Numbered from the whole stretch's first letter, positions 43,824-58,316 are shown. The stretch: DNA of 58,316 nucleotides, filler included, from Dugesia japonica (GCA_001938525.1; 6 parts of 6 records of this genome joined end to end with filler, not necessarily neighbours in it); one strand, 5' to 3'. Program-made: numbers and translations. The notes: generated by a model not told the origin, from the sequence alone.

Positions 43824-44458
43824 GAGGAATTATCAATTGAGTTATATCTTTTATCATCTATAATTGGGTGAGGAATAATTCTTTGAAAAGGTTTTAAAAC
43901 TTCATTTCTGGTTGTATTATATGGTGTTGCAAGCTCTGTAATTTTTTTCAGCATTATTTTTTTATTCATTTTATCTATGTAGTAATCATGGGAATTTCCA
44001 GTGTTACTCGAACCATTGGATAAAGATTTGAATTTCCCATTCGAAAATCGGTTTGAATTGTTAGAATTGATTATTAATCCTTGATTTGGGTTATTACTAG
44101 GTACCAAGCGAAAGGTAGAATTTCTAAACGCTTTGAACGCATTTATTTGATTTCTTGGTATCAACTTTATTTCATTTGTAAACAGTTTATCTGAAACTGT
44201 ACTATTATTTTCATTTGGCCTAGAACAAATCGANNNNNNNNNNNNNNNNNNNNNNNNNNNNNNNNNNNNNNNATACTTATTGAAATTTTCATTTTCTTTC
44301 ACAGTTGTTTGGCAACCAGATTTACAGAAATTTTGAGAAGAATAAATTCCAGAATGGATTTCGTTGCTATTATTTGTAATTATATCATAATTACAATTAG
44401 AAATATTTTGCGAAAAATTATTTGTACGTTGTCTACCACCGTTATAGCTTTGATACAT
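43824..44458 (-). CDS. Candidate first coding exon of an N/S-rich host protein, truncated by gap
   Basis: ATG-initiated frame open for ~210 codons across one small gap; no domain recognised. Confidence 0.45.
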
Positions 44459-45308
44459 TACAAATCAAAATAACATTTCAAAATGAATTTAAATTAAAAT
44501 GTAACAAATTCATATGATAAAAAATATTTAGCAACTTGACAATTTTGAATTAAAATTTTATTTATTTTTTTAAATCAGAAATTATTTGTAGCCAATAAAA
44601 TTTAATCAATTTATTATTGAGTCAAATATTATTTAATAAAATTTTTAAATTTATTTTTAATTAAAAGATTATAAATAATAAATTATAACTCCAAAAAGTT
44701 TTTTGCAATTAATACAATTAGTACTTGTAGCAAAAATTCTTTGTCCATTTTTTTTATTAATTAACAAAGACAAATTAAAGAAGATTAAAATAAATACTTT
44801 AATTTGGTAACCAATAGAATACAATGTTAACAAATCTCAGTCAAAACAATCTAAGCGTTTTACCATTGTTAAAGTCAACTATATATATTCGCACATGCAT
44901 GAGTCTAACTTGGTTCTATGTTTTGTTATGACTTTAGTTGTGTTCCTTTTTAACTTTCAAAGAATGTTCGTTACACTGTATATTAGCTTTAATAATCGGG
45001 TTAATAAATTCAAAGCATGATTAATCATTTTGTACCCAAGTCCTGCTCTTGTAATACCAATAATTACTTGATATAATGTGAGATAATAATTTTTTCACGT
45101 AAGATTTTGAGCCGACATAATAAGCTGCAGAGTTATGCTTATTCTATTTGGTAGTTTAAGCAAAAAAATTATTTGTCAGACTGCTAACAAATATCACAAA
45201 ACACCAACTGATGAGATATTATTCTGCCTGCTCGATAAGTATGTATACTAATTTTTCAAGAAAAAAATTCAAAAATACAAACATAATCAGAAAATATAAC
45301 ATAAAATA

Positions 45309-45708
45309 CATTAAATTGGAAGTAGCGACGGGTGGTGTGTACGAAGGGTGTGTACATAATCAGCGCAAGCTAGTAACTTGCGCTTACTAGGAATTCCTCG
45401 TTCATGTGAAATAATTACAATTCTCAATCCCTGTTACGACAGTGTTTCATAAGATTTCCCAACTATTTATAGTAAGGTATACTCGTTAGAACTGCCATTG
45501 TAGCGCGCGTGCGGCCCCGGATATCTGAGAGCATCACATACATATTATTGCTCTTTTTCATTTAGTTAGACGCTATTTATTCTTCTAAGTAGTGATTATT
45601 TATGAGTTAAAATAAATACACAGCAAGTTAGAGTCTCGTTCATTATAGGAATTAACCTGACAAATTGCTCCACCAACTAAGAACAGCCATGCACCACCAC
45701 CCACTGAA
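45309..45708 (-). pseudogene. 18S rRNA fragment (3' third), degenerate
   Basis: Minus strand carries GGTGGTGGTGCATGGC.GTTCTTAGTTGGTGGAGC, GCCGCACGCGCGCTACA, AACGAGGAATTCCTAGTAAGCGC and GTACACACC.CCCGTCGCTAC, with substitutions at normally invariant sites. Confidence 0.93.
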
Positions 45709-47535
45709 AGTTAAAATCAATTATAATTACACCAACAGATAAAAAAATGAATTGGTAGCTCTATCTAAAAAAAACACAATGAATTTTTTTCAGAACATTA
45801 CAATAATTATGAAACAATAGATTACAAAAGACTACCAACTACAGAAGAAATTAAATTCAACAAACAATTAATAAAATATTTACTTTTAGAAGTTAAATGT
45901 CATGAACCAGTTCCATCATCGATGTAATGTGTTCCTAAAGATCACAAAAAAAAACAATGAAAGGAAGATCTATTGCAAACGCTTCTGACACTCCTTCTAA
46001 TGCATTATGCAAACATTTAGCAGATATATAGAAATCACTATTAAGTTTCATTTCGGCACATTTAAAGAATAGTAATGAGTTTATCGAACAAATTAAAAAT
46101 TTTAACTGGGAGAGTGATGATGAATTTGGTTCATTAGATGTAACAAATCTATATGGATCAATTCCCATTGAATGATCTGAAAATGTCATTGATATTGTAA
46201 GTGACTTCTTGGAAAGATACAAAGAACATACAGATATTACAGAAATCATCAAAAATGATTTCAAATGTATTTTCAATTTGTGTCTCTTCTCTGATAGCAT
46301 TTTCATCGGTGAACAACTTTTTAAACAAAAAGGTGGTCTTGAAATTGTTTATAATTTCTCTCCAATTCTAGCGATAATTTTCATGAACTTCATTGAAAAT
46401 CAAATAATTCTTAAATCAAACTAGAAAATTCATCGATGGTTTAGATACATAGATGATATTTTCTTTGTAACTAATTCTCCTTTAGAGAACATTTTTGAAT
46501 TAGCCAACAGTATAAATATAAACATTAAATTCACTTTAGAGAAATCAATTGACTTTCCGATTCCCTTTTTGAACACTTTGATCCAAAACAAACCTGGTGA
46601 TATATTAACTACCCAATTATATATGAAACCATTTCACAGTGGACATATATTACCTTGAAGTAGTAATACTACNNNNNNNNNNNNNATTGGTATAATTAAA
46701 GGTGAAAGAATTCGAGCTGAAAGACTATCTTCAAATGAAGAAATGAAATTGATTTCTCTCAAATTGATAAAAAATAAACTTTTAAATCACGGCTATCCAA
46801 ATAAAATTTATTCGAAATATTTATCTGTAAATACAAAACAAATTAAAATCAAACCAAAAACAAACAAAAGGAGAAATGTAGCCAAATCATGCAAAATATA
46901 ATAAAGAATTCTAAACTAGAACACAATCAACGAATTATATTCAAAACGCAAGCAACTTGGTCATCCAATTACAAAAACCAAGACAAAATCTTTGTGGTCC
47001 CAAATGTATTTGTGATGGTAAAAATATATGCAATAAGAAAAATGTCACTTATAAAATAACATGCACCATTTGTCAAGAAACATATATAGATGAAACATGC
47101 AGAACCATCCGAACAAGAATTAAGAAACATTTGAAACAAAAAGAAAGTGAAATCTTCAAACACTTTCAACACAAACATAAAATTTAACCAGAAAAACATC
47201 ACATAACATTAAAAACACTAGGAATGTCTACATTTCTACACTACATAGAAAAAAAACATGAAGAATTACTAATTAAAGAAAACATTCTTAAAATCAATGT
47301 AATTTATAATAAGTAAATTATTAATAATTAAAATAATTAAATTTAAGTAAAAATTTAAATTAACAACACTAAAATGTAATAAAAAAATTAATTCAAAAAT
47401 AATTACTATTCTAAAGATAAATCTTGAATGAATTAAAAAGTCAATTCCTGATGAAGACAAAGTCGAAATATAGAATTGTTATCAAAAACCAAAAAAAAAA
47501 CAAATTTTGATCGAAGCTTTTATTTTAAATGAATT
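45709..47535 (+). mobile_element. Penelope-like retroelement (RT + GIY-YIG), 5'-truncated, with 3' pseudo-LTR
   Basis: IIITPTDK, GSLDVTNLY, FKQKGGL...FSPILAIIFM, WFRYIDDIF, NGYP-like, NVTYKITC..CQETYIDET; stops and frameshifts. Confidence 0.92.
47442..47478 (+). ncRNA. Minimal type I hammerhead ribozyme in the PLE pseudo-LTR
   Basis: CAATTC-CTGATGA-A-GAC-aaa-GTC-GAAA-ta-TA-GAATTG: 6-bp stem I, intact core, palindromic stem III. Confidence 0.85.
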
Positions 47536-48902
47536 GATATAGAATATATATTCCAATATACCCTGATAATAGTCACAAGGCTGCTGTCAAATTTCATGTG
47601 GCTTATCCAAAAATACTAACATTCCGTTTGAATTGAGAAAGGCCACAAAATATTCCAAAAGTATATGGATTGAATCCTGAGAAAGTCCAAGTCATTTAAT
47701 GTTGATGACGTTGATGACGTTCTCCTGTTTTCACTGACAAAACCTCACACAGAATATATAAGAACGAATTTATTAAAAATAATGGCTCCTTTGCATTATC
47801 TAGTTGCTGACGTACGCAAAACAGAAAATATTTGTTGCTGCATTACAGATATTCAACTTTAAAAATCAGAAAATTATGTATTTTTATCTTTAATGAATCT
47901 GTCGCCAAACAANNTAGAATCAATTTCACCTGACATGGTTCAAATTAAATTTATTTAATTTATTTAAAAGACATCTTTGAGTTAGTATTTCTTTGTGCAT
48001 CTTTATGAATGTAAAATTAATTGCATTCTAATTGAAATTAGACATCAATACTAATTATTGTGATATGTATATCATTTTCTTATTATAAAGGGTACTAAAG
48101 ATTCAGACCCAAATTGTTTATATCACCTCAATTTTATTTGGTAATAAGAATGAAATGTTCAACAATTTTATGTTTATTATTATAATTCGAATCCTGGTTA
48201 TATAATTAATGTAACCTATCGTTCACGTACTTATCAAAAATGACTTAGATATCATTAGGTATTATATGTACGTCAACATATTCTTTCTATAGAAAGCGTT
48301 TCAATAAGCTTCAGAGGAAGATAAAATGATAGACAGGAAATAGATCCTGTGCAATCTACTAATATAATTATAAATGTGTTTGGTGAATAAAATGTTTGTT
48401 ATCATTAATTTGTTTTGAAAAATGAGCATCGAAATTCATTTTGTCGCTAACATTCAAAAATCTCAAAGATGGGTTTCTACAAAAACCCACTGCAATCGGG
48501 AAAAGAAATGAAATTATACATTTCCCCAAATACTTGAGGCTCCAGATAGAAAAATGTGCAATGAAGAAAGTAATTGAAGTTGTACAAGAAGATTTAAAAG
48601 CCTAGGAACACATCATGTACTTCTAAAATTCATAAGACCAATGAAAATAAAGATACGTAGTAAAAGGCTGACCAATCAGACAAGAGTGAATCATCTTGTG
48701 ACATTTGTGTGATAATTACAAATCGATACAGAGAACAGGAAATACATAGAATAAGTGCCATTCAGAAACATTGAAAATCTTAAGTTTATAGAAAAATACA
48801 AATATTTTAAAAACAAATATTTCATTAAAATATTATTATAAAAATAATTTATAAATCAATTATTTTTTAGATATTATTAATAAGTAAATTTTCGACTTTT
48901 AA

Positions 48903-51900
48903 ATGAAAGGAAATTTGCTTCAAGAAACTTATTTTAAAAACATTAATCTTTATAAATCTGTTCCGAAAAAGCAGATAATTACCGAAGAATTCTGGTTTGT
49001 TAATGCAGGAATTTTACCCGATTCGTATTTCGACAAAGCATTAGTTGTAATTGGAACTTATAAATTTAAAACTGATGAATTACGTTTTATTTTATTTTTG
49101 GGAATAAAATACTTAATTCATTATATTGAATTATTTTCATTTGATAATACTCCATTGTTAATTGAATCTATAAATAGACACCTGAAATATTTGGAAGCCT
49201 TATTAAGTAAACAGAAAAAATGTAGAAATTATCTTAGTTACAGTTATATTAATAAATTAAGATTTGTTTTTGAAAGTCTTCAAAATATTGAATATAATAA
49301 TTATGTTTGTCGGCAAATTTATATTGATCAATTGGAAAGATTTTGCTGTTTATTTTCATCTCGTTTGAAAATATGGATAAAAAATTCTCGGCTGCAAGCT
49401 TATTTGATAAGATTTGGATTTGATCCTTACAGAACTTCTGCTATTTATAATTCTTTTCTTGTTCCCAATGAAAAGAAATACATTGATCCATTATTTCAAG
49501 TAAATCAAAAATTTATTGAAAAAATGGGAACACGATGTAAATGTAAAATAATGCTGTCAATTGAAAGTACCGAATGCTATCTGTTTCCAGAATACATTAC
49601 ACTTGAAGTATTATTTGATTTGTATCATGGAAATTATATGGGTTTTGTAGAAATGTTTGGTTACGTAATTAAGCAATTAAATCCAACACAGTATTTTGTA
49701 AAATCTTGCAGAACAATTCTTATAGAAGGAGCCAGACTTTACAATATCTTAACTGACGTTCCAGTAAGAAAATTGAAATATTTAGAGAAAACTGTAATCC
49801 CAGGATGTCCATGCCCTCCTTTTCTTAATATAAATAGTATAAGTAAACAATTTCTCAATATTGTTGAAATGATTCGGGAAGAAGAAAATAATGTAGTCGG
49901 TTTTCGAAGTACAGAAAAATCAAAATCTTACAATTCCAATGAAATATCAGACGAGACCGGTTTGGATTTCAATAATGAACATTATTATAAAACTCATTCC
50001 AATGAAACTGAATTATCGAAATTGAAACAAAAAGTTGATCATTTAAATCATTCGCATTTATTGTTAAAATATTTCCAAGAAAAATATGATGAAGAAATGA
50101 TTAAAATTAATCTTAAGAACCAAATGAAAAAAAACAGATTATTAATGGGTATAAACAAATCGCAGACTCAATCTTCTTTGCCTTATGAAATTCCGTCGAG
50201 TAATATTAAAAGTAAAAGACATTTATCAAAAAATGACCAAATTATTCACGAAGCATTACCAGAAAATCAATTGAACCTAGAAATAAATGAAATAGATGAA
50301 AAAAAATTTGTAGATGAGAAAAATAAAAATCTAGAAGAAATTATGACACTGAATGATAGTGTTGATCCAATTTATCAGGAGATAATTCGTGAAGTTAATC
50401 AAAATCAATCTTTAAACGGCAATAGTCAGGTTAATGAAAGTAATATTACTTCAGGAAAAAATGAACAAGTTGAAAAGAAAGGTCTAATCGATTTTGTCAA
50501 TCTTACGCCTTCAGAACAATTTAGTATTTTATTAAACGAAACTTTTAACATTTATTCTGATGAATATAATTGGATAAATCATAAAATGCGACTTATGCTA
50601 AGATGCAGAACTGAACAAACAATTGACGATTTAAAATATCCATACATATTTGAAAGACGAACTATTAGCGATAGACTGAGACACAAACATGCTTATAAGA
50701 AAAAATTTTACAAACATAATTTATATAATCGATCGTACTCCAATATACCGAAATTAACGTCTAAAATAACAACAGTTTCATCAGATCAATCATGGATTTC
50801 ATTTGAAACTAATAAAATTTTATCTCAACATTCATTAACAGAAGAAATTATTGACTCAAATTCAAGTTCAAATTCTGAAATTAACATTTATGATGCTAAT
50901 GATTTAAGTAAAGAATTGCCAGATGTAGCGAAATATCTAAGAAAATTTGATATGAGATTAATGGATACATTTATTAGTCGAAAACTGTTTCGCAAGCAGA
51001 ATTGGATAAATTTTTTAGAATTGAATTTAAATTTTCACTATTCAAGAGAAATCGAAATTTTCAAGCTGTGTAATACAGAAGATATTTACAGAAGAGTTTA
51101 TGAAAGTCATTCAGATGAAATTGAGAGTTTTAAAGACCCACTGAAACAAAGAATATACGCATTACTGATTCTGCTAACAAATGAAACGATAACGAATAAA
51201 AATTTTCTTGAATTAATAGATGGGCAAGGAATAAACTTTACAATTGTTAACAAGATTAATAAATCTCGTTCAGCTTTTCCAACATTTGTTGGTAATCTGG
51301 ATAAAATTAAAAAGAAAGATTACATTGGTAATTTATCAAGATGTTTATGTCAATTAATGTATGATTTAATTCATCTTGGTTATGAATGTTCTTCTGAATT
51401 ATTTTACATTATGAAAGCTCACACTTCTGCTTTAAGTGAAATTTTAAAGAACATCAATGATGAAGATATACAATCAGCTTTTAAAACGTTAAACATAATA
51501 AAGGATTTATCAAAGTTCAATATAAAGTCAACTGTAAATGGTACAGGGCCAAATACATCTATGCTTCATCTAGCAGAAGAACTATCATTACTTCATGATA
51601 TAATTTTTAAAAACCCATGTTGTTCTTATAAAATACACAAACATCTTGGAATACACATAATCTATCATTCAATGCAGTTAGATGACAGATTAAACGCAGT
51701 CGAACCGTTTTTGAAATTACCTGGTGACAGAAGAATTAGAAAAATTGAAAAAATGTGCAACTGTCTTATTGCATTACGAACTGGCCAACATCCGATTGTT
51801 CCGATGAATCAATACCATGTAGATATTTATTATGACTTCGAAAATGGTAATCATTTTGGTGCCATGGAATTATTGAAACANNNNNNNNNNNNNNNNNNNN

Positions 51901-52145
51901 NNNNNNNNNNNNNNNNNNNNNNNNNNNNNNNNNNNNNNNNNNNNNNNNNNNNNNNNNNNNNNNNNNNNNNNNNNNNNNNNNNNNNNNNNNNNNNNNNNNN
52001 NNNNNNNNNNNNNNNNNNNNNNNNNNNNNNNNNNNNNNNNNNNNNNNNNNNNNNNNNNNNNNNNNNNNNNNNNNNNNNNNNNNNNNNNNNNNNNNNNNNN
52101 NNNNNNNNNNNNNNNNNNNNNNAAAAAAAAAATATTTTCAACTAA
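48903..52145 (+). CDS. Unknown ~1070-aa protein, paralog 1 (true C-terminus hidden in gap 51881-52122)
   Basis: Uninterrupted ~990-codon frame in ~25% GC DNA; collinear homology with 53302-56427. Confidence 0.9.
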   Translation: MKGNLLQETYFKNINLYKSVPKKQIITEEFWFVNAGILPDSYFDKALVVIGTYKFKTDELRFILFLGIKYLIHYIELFSFDNTPLLIESINRHLKYLEALLSKQKKCRNYLSYSYINKLRFVFESLQNIEYNNYVCRQIYIDQLERFCCLFSSRLKIWIKNSRLQAYLIRFGFDPYRTSAIYNSFLVPNEKKYIDPLFQVNQKFIEKMGTRCKCKIMLSIESTECYLFPEYITLEVLFDLYHGNYMGFVEMFGYVIKQLNPTQYFVKSCRTILIEGARLYNILTDVPVRKLKYLEKTVIPGCPCPPFLNINSISKQFLNIVEMIREEENNVVGFRSTEKSKSYNSNEISDETGLDFNNEHYYKTHSNETELSKLKQKVDHLNHSHLLLKYFQEKYDEEMIKINLKNQMKKNRLLMGINKSQTQSSLPYEIPSSNIKSKRHLSKNDQIIHEALPENQLNLEINEIDEKKFVDEKNKNLEEIMTLNDSVDPIYQEIIREVNQNQSLNGNSQVNESNITSGKNEQVEKKGLIDFVNLTPSEQFSILLNETFNIYSDEYNWINHKMRLMLRCRTEQTIDDLKYPYIFERRTISDRLRHKHAYKKKFYKHNLYNRSYSNIPKLTSKITTVSSDQSWISFETNKILSQHSLTEEIIDSNSSSNSEINIYDANDLSKELPDVAKYLRKFDMRLMDTFISRKLFRKQNWINFLELNLNFHYSREIEIFKLCNTEDIYRRVYESHSDEIESFKDPLKQRIYALLILLTNETITNKNFLELIDGQGINFTIVNKINKSRSAFPTFVGNLDKIKKKDYIGNLSRCLCQLMYDLIHLGYECSSELFYIMKAHTSALSEILKNINDEDIQSAFKTLNIIKDLSKFNIKSTVNGTGPNTSMLHLAEELSLLHDIIFKNPCCSYKIHKHLGIHIIYHSMQLDDRLNAVEPFLKLPGDRRIRKIEKMCNCLIALRTGQHPIVPMNQYHVDIYYDFENGNHFGAMELLKXXXXXXXXXXXXXXXXXXXXXXXXXXXXXXXXXXXXXXXXXXXXXXXXXXXXXXXXXXXXXXXXXXXXXXXXXXXXXXXXXXKKNIFN

Positions 52146-53301
52146 GCTTGAATTTAAATTAAATTAATTAAATTGATAAACTTATATATTAACAAATTGT
52201 ATAATCGAATTAAATTAATAAAGCAATTTTGTTTTGATGACTTAAAAATTCAGTAAATTATTTTACCCAATTTACTATTTTATTTTAATTATATTCTTTT
52301 ATATTATAATTATTATAATAATTTATTATAATTATATTTTATTTTAATATATATATATGTGAAGTTTTAAAAAATATTGCCAAAAAACCCTAACCGCAAA
52401 AGATAGAGAATTTAATTTTCTATAATTCATATATCCATTTTCAGAAAAAATGTTTGGTTTTTGAGATATATAACATTTTAAGAATTTCGACTCTAGGAGG
52501 GTATCTATCAATTTTTCAAATTGAAACTAATGTCATTGACCTTTAAATTAAAAAGTGTCTATACATTCTCTTAAAATATATTACCAAAAAAAAGGTCATT
52601 AGAGTCGGTAGATAGTCTACTTTTCAAATTATTGAAAACTAAAGTATATAGTTGGATAGGAAATTAAAAAGTAAGATGGGAATGTGCCATGAGCTTGTAT
52701 CTTAAAATTGTTCCTTTCCCATAAAATTAAATTTTTATATGATTTTTTTTTCAAAACTTATTTTAACTAAAAATAAAAAGTTCAAAAAAAATAAAATATA
52801 AATTGAACTCATTCAACCCAATTGTTACATTATTTTCTTGATTATCGTATATGGACACGGATAATCTTCCAAATCAGATGCAAAATCGTAGTCTTCATGA
52901 AAATATTCTAATATTTCTCTGAAATCTATCGTTATAGTTCATGCGTCTCGTTTTTCTTTCCAATTTTGGAAACCTTTCGTTGATTACCTTTTCCCAATTT
53001 CTAAAACATAAATTAAAACAATAATGATAATTAAAATTCTTTACCATATTAAATCACTTTTTTTATTATCGTATTTAAATAGGAAATGAATTGCTTTATA
53101 AACAAATTTCATGAAAATTCTCTAAATTCGAGAAATTGATATTTACTAAATAAAAGTAATGATAATATTTTACAACTAATATATAATAAAATAAAATATA
53201 ATTATAAACTATATAATAAATAAAATATTGAATTTTTCAAAAAAATAAATATTGATCTTCTTTCTTTTAATTTATAATTTAACCCATTTTAGTTCTTAAA
53301 A

Positions 53302-56300
53302 ATGAAAGGCAGTTTTATAAATTCGGCAAAATCTCCCGGAGTAGAAATAATACCAAAAAAATATTTGATTGATGAAAACTTTTGGTTTGTTAATGCTGGA
53401 TTACTTTCTGATTCGATTTACAACAGAGCGGTATTATTTATAGGAACCTTTCCATTTAATATTCGGGATTTTAATTTTGTTTTGTTTCTTGGAATTAAAT
53501 ATCTGATTCATTACATTGAATTGTTTACATTTGATAATACACCTTTGTTGATTGAATGCATAATGAAACATTTGAGATATTTACAGGCACTTCTTGGAAC
53601 TCAAAGAAAATCAAAGAAATTTCTTAATTATGGATTCATAATAAAGCTTCAGTATATTTTTAATAATCTACAGAATGTCGATGATAGAAACTTTGCTTGC
53701 CGACAAATGTATATTGATCAATTGGAAAGGTTCTGTAATTTATTTGTTGGTCGCTTAAATATTTGGATAAAAAATCCTCGTCTTCAAGCCTACTTATTCA
53801 GATATGGATATGATCCGTTTCGTTCTTCGGTGATTTATAATTCTTTTCTTATTCCTAATCAGAAACGTTATGTTGATCCATTATGTCGACTAGATCAGAA
53901 ATTCATAGAGAAAATTGAAGTCAAATGCAACTGTAAAATAATGTTGAGTGTTGAAAATACAGATTGCATTCTTTTCCCAGAATATATAACACTTGAAGTT
54001 GTTTTTGATTTATATCGAGGAAACTATGTTGGTTTTATTGAAATGTTTGGTTATATTGTCAAAAGATTAAACCCAACACAATATTTTGCGAAATCACTGA
54101 GAACTGTGTTGATTGAAGGATCTTTACTTTATAATATTTTAACTAATGTTCCAATTAGAAAATTGAAATATCTAGAAAAAACCGTTACAGCTGGTTGTCC
54201 GATAACACCATTTTTAAGCGTTGGAAGTATAAGTAAACAACTTCTTAGTATAGTAGCAATAATGCGAGAAAACGATAATGATTTTATTAATAATACAATG
54301 AAAGAAACTTTATCTGACTTTAGCGAAGAAAATTCAAAAGAAGTAGATCTGAATTTTGATAAACAAAGATATTATACTAGCCATTCAACTGTTAGTGAAT
54401 TTAATAAATTACAAGATAATATCAATGATATTAATTATTCTCAAAAGCTTTTGAAATATTTCAAATCCAAATATGATATTGTCATGCAAGAAATTAATTT
54501 CGAAAATGAAATCAAAAAGGAAAATATAAGAAAATTAATAACATCCCAGGAGAATTCGCAAATATTGATGCCGAAAGTAACAGTGAATGAGACTCGAAGC
54601 GATAAACCTGAAACAGTTAATCAAATTGTTTATAAAGATCTACCTGAAGGTTTTGTTGAGAGTTCAAATAATTTCAAAAATGAAGTTTTGTCATTTGATA
54701 AAGAAAATATGAATTATTTAAATACTTTGAAAGATATTCCGAAAATGAAAGAATTTTTAAATAACAATATTAATGAAAATAATATTTGTGCTATTCATAA
54801 AGAATTACTCAATGATTCTGATATAGATTTTGAAAAGCTTGAACCAATAGATCAATTCAAATTATTACTGAAAGAAACATTTACGGATTATTCTATTGAA
54901 GAAAATTGGATAAATCATAAAATGCGATTAATGATGAAATGTAATACAGAAAGTACAATTGATGATTCTAAATATCCATATGTATATCAGAAAGCAAGCA
55001 TTAGAGATAGATTAAATAAGAAGATACATTATAGAAGTAAGTTTCCTTTGCCACGTGGAGTTTCTCGGACATTTTCAACTCATAAAGCCCAAACGAAAAT
55101 CACAAATCAAACCTCTAGACGTTCTTGGATATCGAAAGCTGCCAGTAGATTATTATCTGAAGGTATTAAATCCCATGATGATGCCGATTCCTACAACAGT
55201 TCACTTTCCGATAGTGATATTTTAAGTGGTGAAGAATTGAAAGAAAAATTTCCGAAAATATTTTTATTTCTAGAAAAATACGGTGAAAATCTGATTGATG
55301 TTTTTTTAAGAAAAAAACTTTACAAAAAACAAGATTGGATGATTTTTCTAAGTAAACAATTTAATTTCACAATTTCCAAAGATCTCTCGTTGAAACGACT
55401 CTGTGATTTTGATAGTATTTTCAAAGCGATTTGCGAGAAAAACTCGGAAAAATTAGAAAATTTCGATGAAGCAATAACTAAGAAAATCTACGCTTTACTG
55501 CTTTTATTAACTGACGAAATGATTACTCAAAAAGAATTTAGTGATATTTACAATGGAAAGGGAGTATCTTTGTTGATTATTAATAAAGTAAATCAATCTC
55601 AAACTTCTGTACCAACTCATATTGGGAATTTAGATTCGTATAAATCAAAAGACTATTTACCAAATTTGTCGCGTTGTTTATGTCAAATGATGTATGATTT
55701 AATTCAAATAGCTCATGAAAGTTCACAAGATGCATTTTATATTCTTAAAATACATATTTCAATGCTAGATGACATTCTGAAAAACATTCAAGATAAAGAT
55801 ATATTAGCAGCGTTTGAAATATTAAATATTCGAAAGTCTTTATTATCACTAGATTTTAAAACTTATATAAGATGTTATGGTCTTGATGGTTCGATGATTT
55901 TAATGGCAGAAGAACTATCATTTCTTCATGATATTATTTTTAAACAGCCATGTTGCTCTTATAAACTAAATAAACACTTAGGACTACATATAATCTATCA
56001 TTCTTTGAAATTAGATGATAGACTGAATACAGTTGAACCGTTTTTCAAATTACCCGGAGATAGAAGAATAAGAAAAATAGAAAAAATCTGTAATTGTTTA
56101 ATAGCTTTAAGATCTCAGAAACATCCAACAGTTCCAATTAATGAATATCTTGTTGATATATTTTATGATTTTGATACTGGGAATCATTTCGGAGCTATTG
56201 ATTTATTAAAACAACTGATAACATCAACAAATAAGTTATTAACCATTCAAGACCATCGAACAATTGTTGCTTATCCGTCAGGTGAATTATGGGTGTTCAG

Positions 56301-56427
56301 AGATACTGTATGGTTGAAGAAATGCTATAACATTAATGAAAATGAATTAAAGAATTTAGAATTATTCCGAAAATTTGACGAAATGAAAGATAAATTTCAT
56401 AATTTCTATGACGATAAGTATACATAA
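53302..56427 (+). CDS. Unknown 1041-aa protein, paralog 2, with an internally duplicated module
   Basis: Intact intronless ORF; conserved N-terminal, central and C-terminal blocks shared with paralog 1. Confidence 0.92.
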   Translation: MKGSFINSAKSPGVEIIPKKYLIDENFWFVNAGLLSDSIYNRAVLFIGTFPFNIRDFNFVLFLGIKYLIHYIELFTFDNTPLLIECIMKHLRYLQALLGTQRKSKKFLNYGFIIKLQYIFNNLQNVDDRNFACRQMYIDQLERFCNLFVGRLNIWIKNPRLQAYLFRYGYDPFRSSVIYNSFLIPNQKRYVDPLCRLDQKFIEKIEVKCNCKIMLSVENTDCILFPEYITLEVVFDLYRGNYVGFIEMFGYIVKRLNPTQYFAKSLRTVLIEGSLLYNILTNVPIRKLKYLEKTVTAGCPITPFLSVGSISKQLLSIVAIMRENDNDFINNTMKETLSDFSEENSKEVDLNFDKQRYYTSHSTVSEFNKLQDNINDINYSQKLLKYFKSKYDIVMQEINFENEIKKENIRKLITSQENSQILMPKVTVNETRSDKPETVNQIVYKDLPEGFVESSNNFKNEVLSFDKENMNYLNTLKDIPKMKEFLNNNINENNICAIHKELLNDSDIDFEKLEPIDQFKLLLKETFTDYSIEENWINHKMRLMMKCNTESTIDDSKYPYVYQKASIRDRLNKKIHYRSKFPLPRGVSRTFSTHKAQTKITNQTSRRSWISKAASRLLSEGIKSHDDADSYNSSLSDSDILSGEELKEKFPKIFLFLEKYGENLIDVFLRKKLYKKQDWMIFLSKQFNFTISKDLSLKRLCDFDSIFKAICEKNSEKLENFDEAITKKIYALLLLLTDEMITQKEFSDIYNGKGVSLLIINKVNQSQTSVPTHIGNLDSYKSKDYLPNLSRCLCQMMYDLIQIAHESSQDAFYILKIHISMLDDILKNIQDKDILAAFEILNIRKSLLSLDFKTYIRCYGLDGSMILMAEELSFLHDIIFKQPCCSYKLNKHLGLHIIYHSLKLDDRLNTVEPFFKLPGDRRIRKIEKICNCLIALRSQKHPTVPINEYLVDIFYDFDTGNHFGAIDLLKQLITSTNKLLTIQDHRTIVAYPSGELWVFRDTVWLKKCYNINENELKNLELFRKFDEMKDKFHNFYDDKYT

Positions 56428-57289
56428 TACATTAAACAATGATTTTATTCATGTCAATTTCTAAATAATATTTCAGTGGTGAGTTTTGTATACTAAACAT
56501 AATTAATTTAAATTGAGAATTTCTTTATATTATTGAGATTTTGTCTTTTAATTGCTTATAATACTGAAAATAATATTCAAAACATTAATAAATGAGTCTT
56601 ATTTGTTCAATTTTTTGTATTAAAGTAAGTTTTAAAAATTTAATCAAATTAGAAATAAAGTAAATATCTTTTAATATATTTTTATAAACTTGCACAAATT
56701 GCCTGTTACCGATTAAACTGTTATTTGAAAAAATGTGTTTGAGAAAGATTAATAAATTGCTCTGATAAATGATAAAATTAGTACATTTTAAGTCGTTCAA
56801 AAGAAAATATCAAGATATCAAAAAGATGCATGGCGATTAGAACGTGCAATCTTCGGAGAAATATGAAATATCTGCTCTCGAAATCAGGGGAAAGAAAATT
56901 TTTGTTTTGATAACTAAAAGGAACTTAGCAATACAAATATATTTTCAAAAAACTGATGATTACGTAATCCATTCAATTAGACAACCTCTTTTTCTACATC
57001 CTTCACTCAGATGTATTTATATTTTATTGTTAGCATTCAAGATTTACTTTCTACTCTTCTATCTCTAATTTCCGTTTTCCCCAACTGTGATATATTCGGT
57101 TTTGCTGTCAAACTGATGATTAGCTCATATTTGTTACCTGTTTGATGAATCTTTCCCTTGAACTGTTTAACTTGGTGAAAATTTCTTGTTATTCATTTAT
57201 TTTCGAATACGAACTCTTAATACTATAAATATGTATCCGCATTATGAGAATGAATCTATTCTACTTTTTCTAATGGATTCCGATGAATT

Positions 57290-57420
57290 TAATGCCACCT
57301 TTAACCAGAGAAGTTTTGATGCTATTATGAAAGTTCGGAGTTTAGTGTAATATTCTCGAAAATCACCTTTAAAAAGCGAAGTTTTTCAAAATATATATAG
57401 AAGAGGATAATGAATCAAAA
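57290..57420 (+). mobile_element. Short hAT transposase remnant
   Basis: AIMKVRSLV*YSRKSPLKSEVFQ resembles hAT KvRxiVxxFrkSP. Confidence 0.4.
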
Positions 57421-57829
57421 AAGAAATTTAATAAATGATGAGGGTAATAAAATTTAAAAAATGGTTTTTCAGTAGACACGAAAACCTGAAACTATTCCCG
57501 TGTTGAAAATATTTGCACAAATTTTCAAGTAGGTTCTTCAGATGAAATTTAGTAGCAATTATGTTCCATAAATTTCATTTCACGCAAGTTTTAAATAAAG
57601 AATAATAATGTGAAAATTTAATTTTATTTATAATATAGAATAAATATTAAAAACTCCTAGTTAACATTTTTATATCATTCGTAAAATTCAGGAATGTCTT
57701 GAATTTTGTATTCATAATGCTCCAATCATAATAGTTTNNNNNNNNNNNNNNNNNNNNNNNNNNNNNNNNNNNNNNNNNNNNNNNNNNNNNNNNNNNNNNN
57801 NNNNNAAAATGAAGAACAAAAATTATTTT

Positions 57830-58290
57830 AAGTATCTGTATTTTGTACAACGGTGTAGGGCAAGATTTTGTGCTGCAATTTGGATATGATTTTCATTGTT
57901 TTGTTTGCTAAGTTTGTGAGGCTCGCAAGTTTCAAATAATTGCTCAAAACCTATCAAATGAAGGTGTGTAAAGATTGTCGGATGAGCGCAGTCCATCATC
58001 ATGATAAAGTCTCTGAATGCTTGGTAATAATCTTTTGAAAAATTGCCTGAAAACATTCATCGTCAAATTCATAAGGTCAACCAGAGCAAAGATTGTCACT
58101 AAGCTCAAAATTAATATTTTTGAAATTATTATTTTAATTTTGAGCAGTACTCGCAACAATGGATTATCTACATACACAGTACAAATTGTTCTTGCCAATT
58201 CCGTAGCATTTTGACCACGAAGAAAGGCTAAGGAAAGTAAATGTTAAGTTTAAACATTTTACCACTTGAAATTTCCATTCGTATTGTTGA
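57830..58290 (-). mobile_element. Mariner transposase N-terminal remnant
   Basis: FLRGQNATELARTICTVY, ELSDNLCSG*PYEFDDE, TIFTHLHLIG...EPHKL. Confidence 0.8.
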
Positions 58291-58316
58291 AATTATGGGT
58301 ACAGTCAAGTTTATGA

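What the first reader, a model, noticed from the sequence alone, without database searches (positions are those of the whole stretch)
53420..56320. Each large protein is built from two diverged copies of a ~270-aa module
Seen by eye in paralog 2: IYNSFLIPNQKRYVDPLCRL-DQKFIEKIEVKCNCKIML aligns with IYHSLKLDDRLNTVEPFFKLPGDRRIRKIEKICNCLIAL, and LEVVFDLYRGNYVGFIEMF aligns with VDIFYDFDTGNHFGAIDLL. Upstream, DFNFVLFLGIKYLIHYIELFTFDNTPLLIECIMKHLRYLQALL aligns without gaps to DYLPNLSRCLCQMMYDLIQIAHESSQDAFYILKIHISMLDDIL. Paralog 1 shows the same repeat (~49443-49680 versus ~51660-51880). The locus therefore encodes four copies of one unnamed domain, and the internal duplication predates the gene duplication.
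Basis: seen in the sequence. Interest (0 to 1): 0.78.

Follow-up and report, generated by a model that had tools for sequence, protein, structure and literature searches.

The report
Orphan proteins with a twice-used 95-residue domain
Two neighbouring genes in an AT-rich eukaryotic genome each encode a roughly 1,040-residue protein of unknown function that carries two diverged copies of an undescribed domain, but the repeat that can be shown is about 95 residues long, not 270.

Summary
The internal repeat is real but shorter than claimed. In paralog 2 (53302-56427), aa 176-271 align with aa 896-990: BLASTP E 1e-7, profile-profile probability 92.8% and E 4e-7, and z 8.6 against shuffles. Paralog 1 (48903 to the N run at 51881) has the same two copies. 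A single-copy 568-aa relative from a metagenome (P0002) matches both copies, at E 2e-22 and 2e-8.

The 43-residue gapless pairing scores +1 in BLOSUM62. An upstream-only profile comparison gives E 0.34, and in-register banded alignments give z below 1. Downstream of the core there is also no signal.

AlphaFold models were too poor (pLDDT about 43) to test superposition. They show only a similar run of five or six helices before each core.

Like copies are 69-77% identical between paralogs, and unlike copies 23-30%. The internal duplication therefore predates the gene duplication.

The family has no Pfam, PDB or other named relative. The C-terminal copy and P0002 share a Cys/His/Cys-x-Cys/His pattern. 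The N-terminal copy has replaced both histidines. My low-confidence guess is one intact and one degenerate copy of a metal-binding or catalytic domain. The evidence is solid but the interest is modest.

The parts
48903..51880 (+). Paralog 1 coding sequence, from Met1 to where the N run cuts it (992 aa readable). Its C-terminus is unknown. The listed ORF end at 52145 comes only from reading through the Ns.
   Evidence: 49% identical to paralog 2 over 992 aa
51881..52122 (.). Run of 242 N (gap or mask) that hides the last ~70 codons of paralog 1. It was not filled.
53302..56427 (+). Paralog 2 coding sequence, complete: 1041 aa, TAA stop, no intron needed.
   Evidence: the start lines up with paralog 1 and P0001, and the end with P0002
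53827..54114 (+). Paralog 2, N-terminal copy of the core domain (aa 176-271). Pattern: YNS ... CxC ... GNY.
   Evidence: matches P0002 at E 2e-8
55987..56271 (+). Paralog 2, C-terminal copy of the core domain (aa 896-990). Pattern: YHS ... CxC ... GNH. Similarity to P0002 runs on to about aa 1006.
   Evidence: matches P0002 at E 2e-22; profile hit 883-1025 at E 1.4e-15
49437..49724 (+). Paralog 1, N-terminal copy of the core domain (aa 179-274).
51654..51878 (+). Paralog 1, C-terminal copy of the core domain (aa 918-992), cut short by the N run.
53344..53826 (+). Paralog 2, conserved helical region ahead of the N copy (aa 15-175). It is shared with P0001. No detectable similarity to the region ahead of the C copy.
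54262..55521 (+). Paralog 2, fast-evolving K/N/S/E-rich linker (aa 321-740). It is 24-42% identical between paralogs, apart from an island at aa 501-550 (58%).
55522..55986 (+). Paralog 2, helical region ahead of the C copy (aa 741-895).

Best explanation
The locus is an old tandem pair of intronless genes in an AT-rich eukaryotic genome. They encode a lineage-restricted, unnamed protein family.

Shown: each protein has this layout.
- A conserved N-terminal region: a helical part followed by core copy 1.
- A long, poorly conserved, low-complexity linker.
- A conserved C-terminal region: a helical part, core copy 2 and a short tail.

Shown: the two cores, about 95 aa each, are homologous. They arose by an internal duplication (or a second acquisition of the same domain) before the gene duplicated. 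Both genes have since been kept under purifying selection, strongest on the cores.

Inferred, low confidence:
- The C-terminal copy is the canonical one. It shares a conserved Cys-Tyr-Lys / Tyr-His-Ser / Cys-x-Cys / Gly-Asn-His pattern with the single-copy relative P0002. That pattern could hold a metal ion or form an active site.
- The N-terminal copy keeps the Cys-x-Cys but has Asn and Tyr in place of the two histidines, and it lacks the upstream Cys. It is most likely a non-liganding, structural or regulatory copy, perhaps packing against the C copy as an intramolecular pseudo-dimer.
- P0002 carries long lysine runs ahead of its domain, which hints at a nuclear role for the family.

The confidence given (0.6) is for the statement as a whole. 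The homology of the cores and the order of events stand at about 0.9. The functional reading stands at about 0.2-0.25.
For: Repeat:
- BLASTP E 1e-7; SW z 8.6; hhalign probability 92.8%, E 4e-7, 95 columns.
- It is the only off-diagonal self-hit.
- The single-copy relative P0002 matches both copies, at E 2e-22 and 2e-8.

Order of events: N-N identity 69%, C-C 77%, N-C 23-30%.

Selection: dN/dS is about 0.14 for aa 1-320 and 0.18 for aa 701-970, against 0.4-0.56 for the linker. dS is saturated.

Gene limits: the starts of P1, P2 and P0001 coincide, and the ends of P2 and P0002 coincide.

Residue pattern:
- The C-type copies plus P0002 share invariant C, Y, K, G, YHS, EPF, D, R, RK, E, CxC, I, YDF, GNH and GA.
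- Only Y, S, P, K, C, C, I, D, G, N and G are invariant across all five cores.
- The related contig L003 reads HSFLIPN at the N copy, so loss of the first His is specific to the window's lineage.

Eukaryotic origin: SSU rRNA fragments at 45400-45701.

Orphan status: no hit in Pfam, NCBIfam, PDB sequences or the 5.8-billion and 1.84-billion protein sets other than P0001 and P0002.
Against: - There is no experimental or structural support for metal binding or catalysis.
- Both AlphaFold models have pLDDT 20-35 across the cores, and Foldseek found nothing below E 0.1.
- The His/Cys pattern rests on only three C-type sequences.
- The N copy has its own conserved Cys222, which could make an alternative site.
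- The N core is no closer to its own C core (23-30%) than to P0002 (31-34%). A simple recent tandem internal duplication is therefore not shown.
- The organism is not identified and expression is not shown for the window's genes.
Confidence: 0.6

Rival explanations
1. The duplicated unit was the whole ~230-270-aa block (helical part plus core), and the helical parts have since diverged beyond recognition.
For: - Low-confidence models predict a similar helix series ahead of each core. In the N region: 54-75, 81-100, 102-109, 112-125 and 131-151. In the C region: 785-805, 809-826, 831-840, 845-848, 852-862 and 865-880.
- The distance from the first helix to the core is similar (123 versus 111 residues).
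- The best upstream local profile hit lies on nearly the same diagonal as the core.
- The test has low power. Even the C-type copy and P0002 are barely alignable upstream (z 1.0 and 2.6).
Against: - No statistic reaches significance: E 0.34, z below 1 in nine banded comparisons, 43-mer score +1.
- Another offset (703) gives an equal hydropathy correlation.
- Runs of helices are common, and these models are unreliable.
- Downstream of the core there is no signal either.
Confidence: 0.3
2. The two cores were not made by duplication inside this gene. The domain was acquired twice, for example by fusing two genes that each already carried it.
For: The N core is slightly more similar to the single-copy protein P0002 (31-34%) than to the C core of its own protein (23-30%). 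The domain exists as a single copy in another lineage.
Against: The differences are within noise for ~75 aligned residues, and faster evolution of the N copy explains them equally well. No protein with only an N-type core is known. P0001 is a fragment that ends at the core.
Confidence: 0.12
3. The N-versus-C similarity is a by-product of the skewed amino-acid composition of an AT-rich genome and not homology.
For: The proteins are rich in I, L, K, N, F and Y. The within-paralog-1 score was equalled by one of 300 shuffles.
Against: - Composition-preserving shuffles give z 8.6 and 9.7.
- BLASTP used compositional adjustment.
- P0002, from a genome that is not AT-rich by eye, matches both copies in the same register with the same invariant residues.
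Confidence: 0.02
4. The genes belong to a mobile element or an integrated virus and are not host genes.
For: They are intronless and tandem, have no relatives in named families, and lie near mobile-element debris: a GIY-YIG fragment at 46957-47187 and a 29-nt inverted repeat in the spacer.
Against: - There are no terminal repeats around either gene, and no similarity outside the coding regions.
- No hit in the viral contig collection, and none in PHROGs apart from a low-complexity match.
- No transposase, integrase or polymerase domain.
- The divergence pattern is that of long-kept cellular paralogs.
Confidence: 0.06

Closest known systems
P0002, a 568-aa 'hypothetical protein' on two ~1.9-kb JGI contigs (L001, L002) that look like transcripts
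   Same: It has one copy of the same core plus the C-terminal tail (YPSxExxVFxDxxW). It is 34% identical to P2 aa 887-1006 at E 2e-22, and it also matches the N copy at E 2e-8. It shares the C-Y-K / YHS / CxC / GNH pattern.
   Different: It has a single copy. Its N-terminal half is acidic and poly-lysine low complexity. It lacks the window proteins' N-terminal region and linker. It has no name, no Pfam domain and no context.
P0001, a 181-aa ORF on a 902-nt ENA metagenome contig (L003)
   Same: It is a close relative of the N-terminal region (aa 15-178, E 3e-70, 57% identity), with the same start position.
   Different: It is only a fragment. It stops at a TGA where the window proteins have Tyr179, and the frame then continues HSFLIPN. 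That places His where the window's N copies have Asn.
SWIM zinc finger (CxCxnCxH), recalled from memory as the best-known Cys-x-Cys motif domain
   Same: A conserved Cys-x-Cys at the start of a predicted strand, with a conserved His further on.
   Different: There is no conserved third Cys followed by x-His at the SWIM spacing, and no Pfam SWIM hit. This is a resemblance in motif only.
MIB/HERC2 domain of E3 ligase MIB1 (the only PDB sequences that surfaced twice)
   Same: A weak local match to P2 aa 961-1006.
   Different: E 0.32 and 2.5, which is at chance level. No support from the fold search.

Membership tests
   E 1e-7; E 4e-7 and probability 92.8%; z 8.6
   43-mer score +1; E 0.34; z below 1 in nine pairs. 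The test has low power.
   Models have pLDDT 42.7 and 43.7. No coordinates were available for superposition. Only a similar helix order was seen.
Any Pfam / NCBIfam / PHROG family | Score at or above the family's curated cut-off | tested here: not met
   No hit near a cut-off. The PHROG 16797 hit at E 0.0022 lies in the low-complexity linker only.
SWIM zinc finger | CxC-x(n)-CxH signature conserved across members | tested here: not met
   The alignments show CxC but no conserved CxH after it. No Pfam hit.
MIB/HERC2 domain | Significant sequence or fold match | tested here: not met
   E 0.32 and 2.5. Absent from the Foldseek list.
Metal-binding or catalytic domain (generic) | Bound metal or activity that depends on H900, C930, C932 and H962 | not testable with these tools
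   Only conservation in three C-type sequences is available.

The most novel reading that the evidence does not exclude
The ~95-residue YHS / CxC / GNH core is a previously undescribed eukaryotic fold with a Cys/His metal or active site. The two-copy proteins are intramolecular pseudo-dimers that pair one intact copy with one degenerate copy, which would be a newly arisen pseudo-enzyme or pseudo-site arrangement in a lineage-restricted family.
Probability: 0.2. Interest if true: 0.5.

Novelty: new variant of a known kind. Interest (0 to 1): 0.3.

Why it matters
The finding defines a small orphan domain family: two window paralogs, one close fragment and one distant single-copy protein among billions of sequences searched. 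It gives the domain boundaries and a residue signature that can seed profile searches and structure work. Internal domain duplication followed by decay of one copy is a common route of protein evolution, so the phenomenon is ordinary. The value lies in correcting the module size and in flagging an unnamed domain with a plausible Cys/His site.

Tried and rejected
- Word-indexed protein searches. The full-length protein, the C-terminal half of P0002 and the 5-sequence core alignment found nothing new.
- Exhaustive profile search of 1.84 billion representatives. It found only P0001 and P0002.
- Locus scans of viral, metagenome (two scans) and prokaryotic genome collections. No confirmed relatives. 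One metagenome call failed for lack of conserved columns.
- Exact look-up of paralog 2. It is not on record.
- PDB sequence searches with the single protein and with two profiles. Chance-level hits only.
- AlphaFold2 on the N region (aa 1-330) and the C region (aa 741-1041) with 3-sequence alignments. Mean pLDDT was 42.7 and 43.7, and the cores were at 20-35.
- Foldseek against the PDB for both models. No hit below E 0.1, and the lists are generic helical bundles. I treat these as meaningless.
- A first anchored-alignment test was badly designed and returned zeros. The banded test replaced it.
- Literature searches on sample identifiers and general terms. Nothing found.
- Organism identification. 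I could only say eukaryotic, from the SSU rRNA fragments. tRNA scan: none found.
- I considered and rejected SWIM, MIB/HERC2, PD-(D/E)xK (the ExK is not conserved in the C-type copies) and a mobile-element origin.

Full report
**What is in the piece**

The piece (43824-58316) is about 25% G+C, with spacers down to 15%. It carries two long open reading frames on the + strand. One runs from 48903 and the other is 53302-56427.

The first runs into a block of 242 N at 51881-52122. Only 992 residues are readable, and its listed end at 52145 is an artefact. The second is complete: 1041 aa with a TAA stop.

The two proteins are 49% identical and collinear over 992 residues. DNA similarity is confined to the coding regions. 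This is an old tandem gene duplication.

Two fragments of a eukaryotic small-subunit rRNA lie at 45400-45701 on the minus strand (112 and 69 bits). The piece is therefore eukaryotic nuclear DNA. I could not name the organism.

**Checking the observation**

The core pairing is real.
- BLASTP of the N-terminal third of paralog 2 against its C-terminal third gives one alignment, aa 177-257 versus 896-977. It has 23/82 identities and E 1e-7.
- Smith-Waterman scores are 98 for paralog 2 (shuffle mean 39.8, sd 6.8, maximum 67; z 8.6) and 63 for paralog 1 (z 4.5). The cross-paralog scores are 79 and 89 (z 5.3 and 9.7).
- Profile-profile comparison gives E 7e-5 with two-sequence profiles.
- With three-sequence profiles it gives E 4e-7 and probability 92.8% over 95 columns, aa 176-271 versus 896-990.
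- A whole-protein self-comparison finds this pair as its only off-diagonal hit.

**The extension to about 270 residues**

This part does not hold up statistically.
- With the cores removed, the upstream profiles align at E 0.34 over 14 columns.
- I restricted the search to a band of 15 residues either side of the diagonal fixed by the cores. Neither local nor global scores exceed shuffles in any of nine N-type by C-type pairs (all z below 1).
The 43-mer alone ranks 41st of 573.
- Downstream of aa 271/990 there is also no N-versus-C signal.

One caution applies. The upstream region is hardly alignable even between the C-type copy and its clear relative P0002 (z 1.0 and 2.6). Absence of signal therefore does not exclude a longer ancestral unit.

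**Structure**

With only three sequences each, mean pLDDT was 43.7 for aa 741-1041 and 42.7 for aa 1-330, and the cores were at 20-35.

The helical parts are somewhat better (55-76). They show a similar series of five or six helices ahead of each core, at similar distance. That is weak support for the longer module.

No coordinates are returned, so no superposition was possible. Foldseek against the PDB returned nothing below E 0.1. I give those lists no weight.

**Relatives**

The family is almost empty.
- There are no Pfam, NCBIfam or PDB sequence matches.
- The word-indexed searches found nothing.
- The locus scans found nothing.
- The exhaustive profile search of 1.84 billion representatives found two proteins.

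P0001 is a 181-aa ORF on a 902-nt metagenome contig. It is a close relative of aa 15-178 (E 3e-70). It ends at a TGA exactly at the Tyr of the 'IYNSF' motif, after which the frame reads HSFLIPN.

P0002 is a 568-aa hypothetical protein on two ~1.9-kb contigs that look like complete transcripts. Its first half is acidic and poly-lysine low complexity. It has a single C-terminal copy of the domain. It matches the C copy of paralog 2 at E 2e-22 (aa 887-1006) and the N copy at E 2e-8 (aa 177-270). This independent bridge settles the homology of the two copies.

**Order of events and selection**

Over the first ~75 core residues, identities are as follows:

| Comparison | Identity |
|---|---|
| N-N | 69% |
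| C-C | 77% |
| N-C | 23-30% |
| N-P0002 | 31-34% |
| C-P0002 | 36-37% |

The data cannot say whether they arose by duplication inside this gene or by fusion.

Between the paralogs, dN/dS is about 0.14 for aa 1-320 and 0.18 for aa 701-970, against 0.4-0.56 for the linker. The cores are the most conserved parts (74-76% identity). dS is saturated, so the ratios are rough. Both genes look functional.

**Anatomy and likely working**

The layout of paralog 2 is:
- a conserved helical region (aa ~15-175)
- core copy 1 (176-271) with a conserved tail to ~320
- a K/N/S/E-rich linker (321-740) with one conserved island near 501-550
- a helical region (741-895)
- core copy 2 (896-990) with a tail to ~1006 that is shared with P0002

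Across all five cores, only Y, S, P, K, C, C, I, D, G, N and G are invariant.

The three C-type sequences share much more. They share a Cys-Tyr-Lys 15 residues before the core, then Tyr-His-Ser, Glu-Pro-Phe, D-x-R-x-RK-x-E, Cys-x-Cys, Tyr-Asp-Phe and Gly-Asn-His-x-Gly-Ala. In paralog 2 the candidate ligands are H900, C930, C932 and H962, with spacings of 30, 2 and 30 residues.

The N copies keep the Cys-x-Cys but have Asn180 and Tyr242 at the histidine positions. They also lack the upstream Cys.

My best guess is inference only. The C copy forms a metal or active site, and the N copy is a degenerate partner, possibly packing on the C copy. The lysine runs in P0002 hint at a nuclear location. 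I put about 0.2-0.25 on this functional reading and about 0.9 on the homology of the cores.

**Comparison with known families**

No family membership can be claimed.
- SWIM shares only the Cys-x-Cys.
- The MIB/HERC2 hits are at chance level.
- The ExK of the N copy, which could suggest a PD-(D/E)xK nuclease, is not conserved in the C-type copies.
- A mobile-element origin is unlikely. There are no terminal repeats, no element-type domains and no viral hits.

**Verdict**

This is a real internal repeat in a real, selected, orphan gene pair. The repeat is about 95 residues, not about 270. The phenomenon is ordinary, the domain is undescribed and its function is unknown.

Noticed in passing
window 45400-45701 (- strand): Two adjacent fragments of a eukaryotic SSU rRNA (Rfam RF01960, model positions 1273-1473 and 1502-1604; 112 and 69 bits). 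They are 33-34% G+C and have many G-to-A and C-to-T changes at paired positions. This is a decayed rDNA-derived fragment lying outside any rDNA unit.
   Followed up: partly
window 46743-47187 (+ strand): A 76-aa ORF with a weak GIY-YIG nuclease match (PF01541, E 0.0016, 19.2 bits, below the 22.6 cut-off). It overlaps short ORFs in other frames. It is probably the remnant of a dead mobile element.
   Followed up: partly
window 52326-52354 and 53179-53207: A 29-nt inverted repeat, 97% complementary, with arms 824 nt apart, in the spacer between the two paralogs. It could be the ends of a small non-autonomous transposon.
   Followed up: no
L003 877-902: In the related metagenome contig the ORF stops at a TGA exactly where the window proteins have Tyr179. 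The same frame continues HSFLIPN to the contig end. It could be a pseudogene, a sequencing error or recoding. It also shows His where the window's N copies have Asn.
   Followed up: partly
window 51881-52145: The 1080-aa length listed for paralog 1 comes from reading through 242 N in frame. The short KKNIFN tail after the gap need not belong to the gene.
   Followed up: yes
window 43824-44458 (- strand): An Asn/Ser-rich ORF that is interrupted by masked N and runs off the left edge of the piece. Its only Pfam match is weak (OGFOD2-like, E 0.044). It may be the end of a neighbouring low-complexity gene.
   Followed up: no
window 54235-54510 (P2 aa 312-403): A PHROG 16797 match (unknown function, E 0.0022) in the low-complexity linker. 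It is most likely compositional.
   Followed up: no
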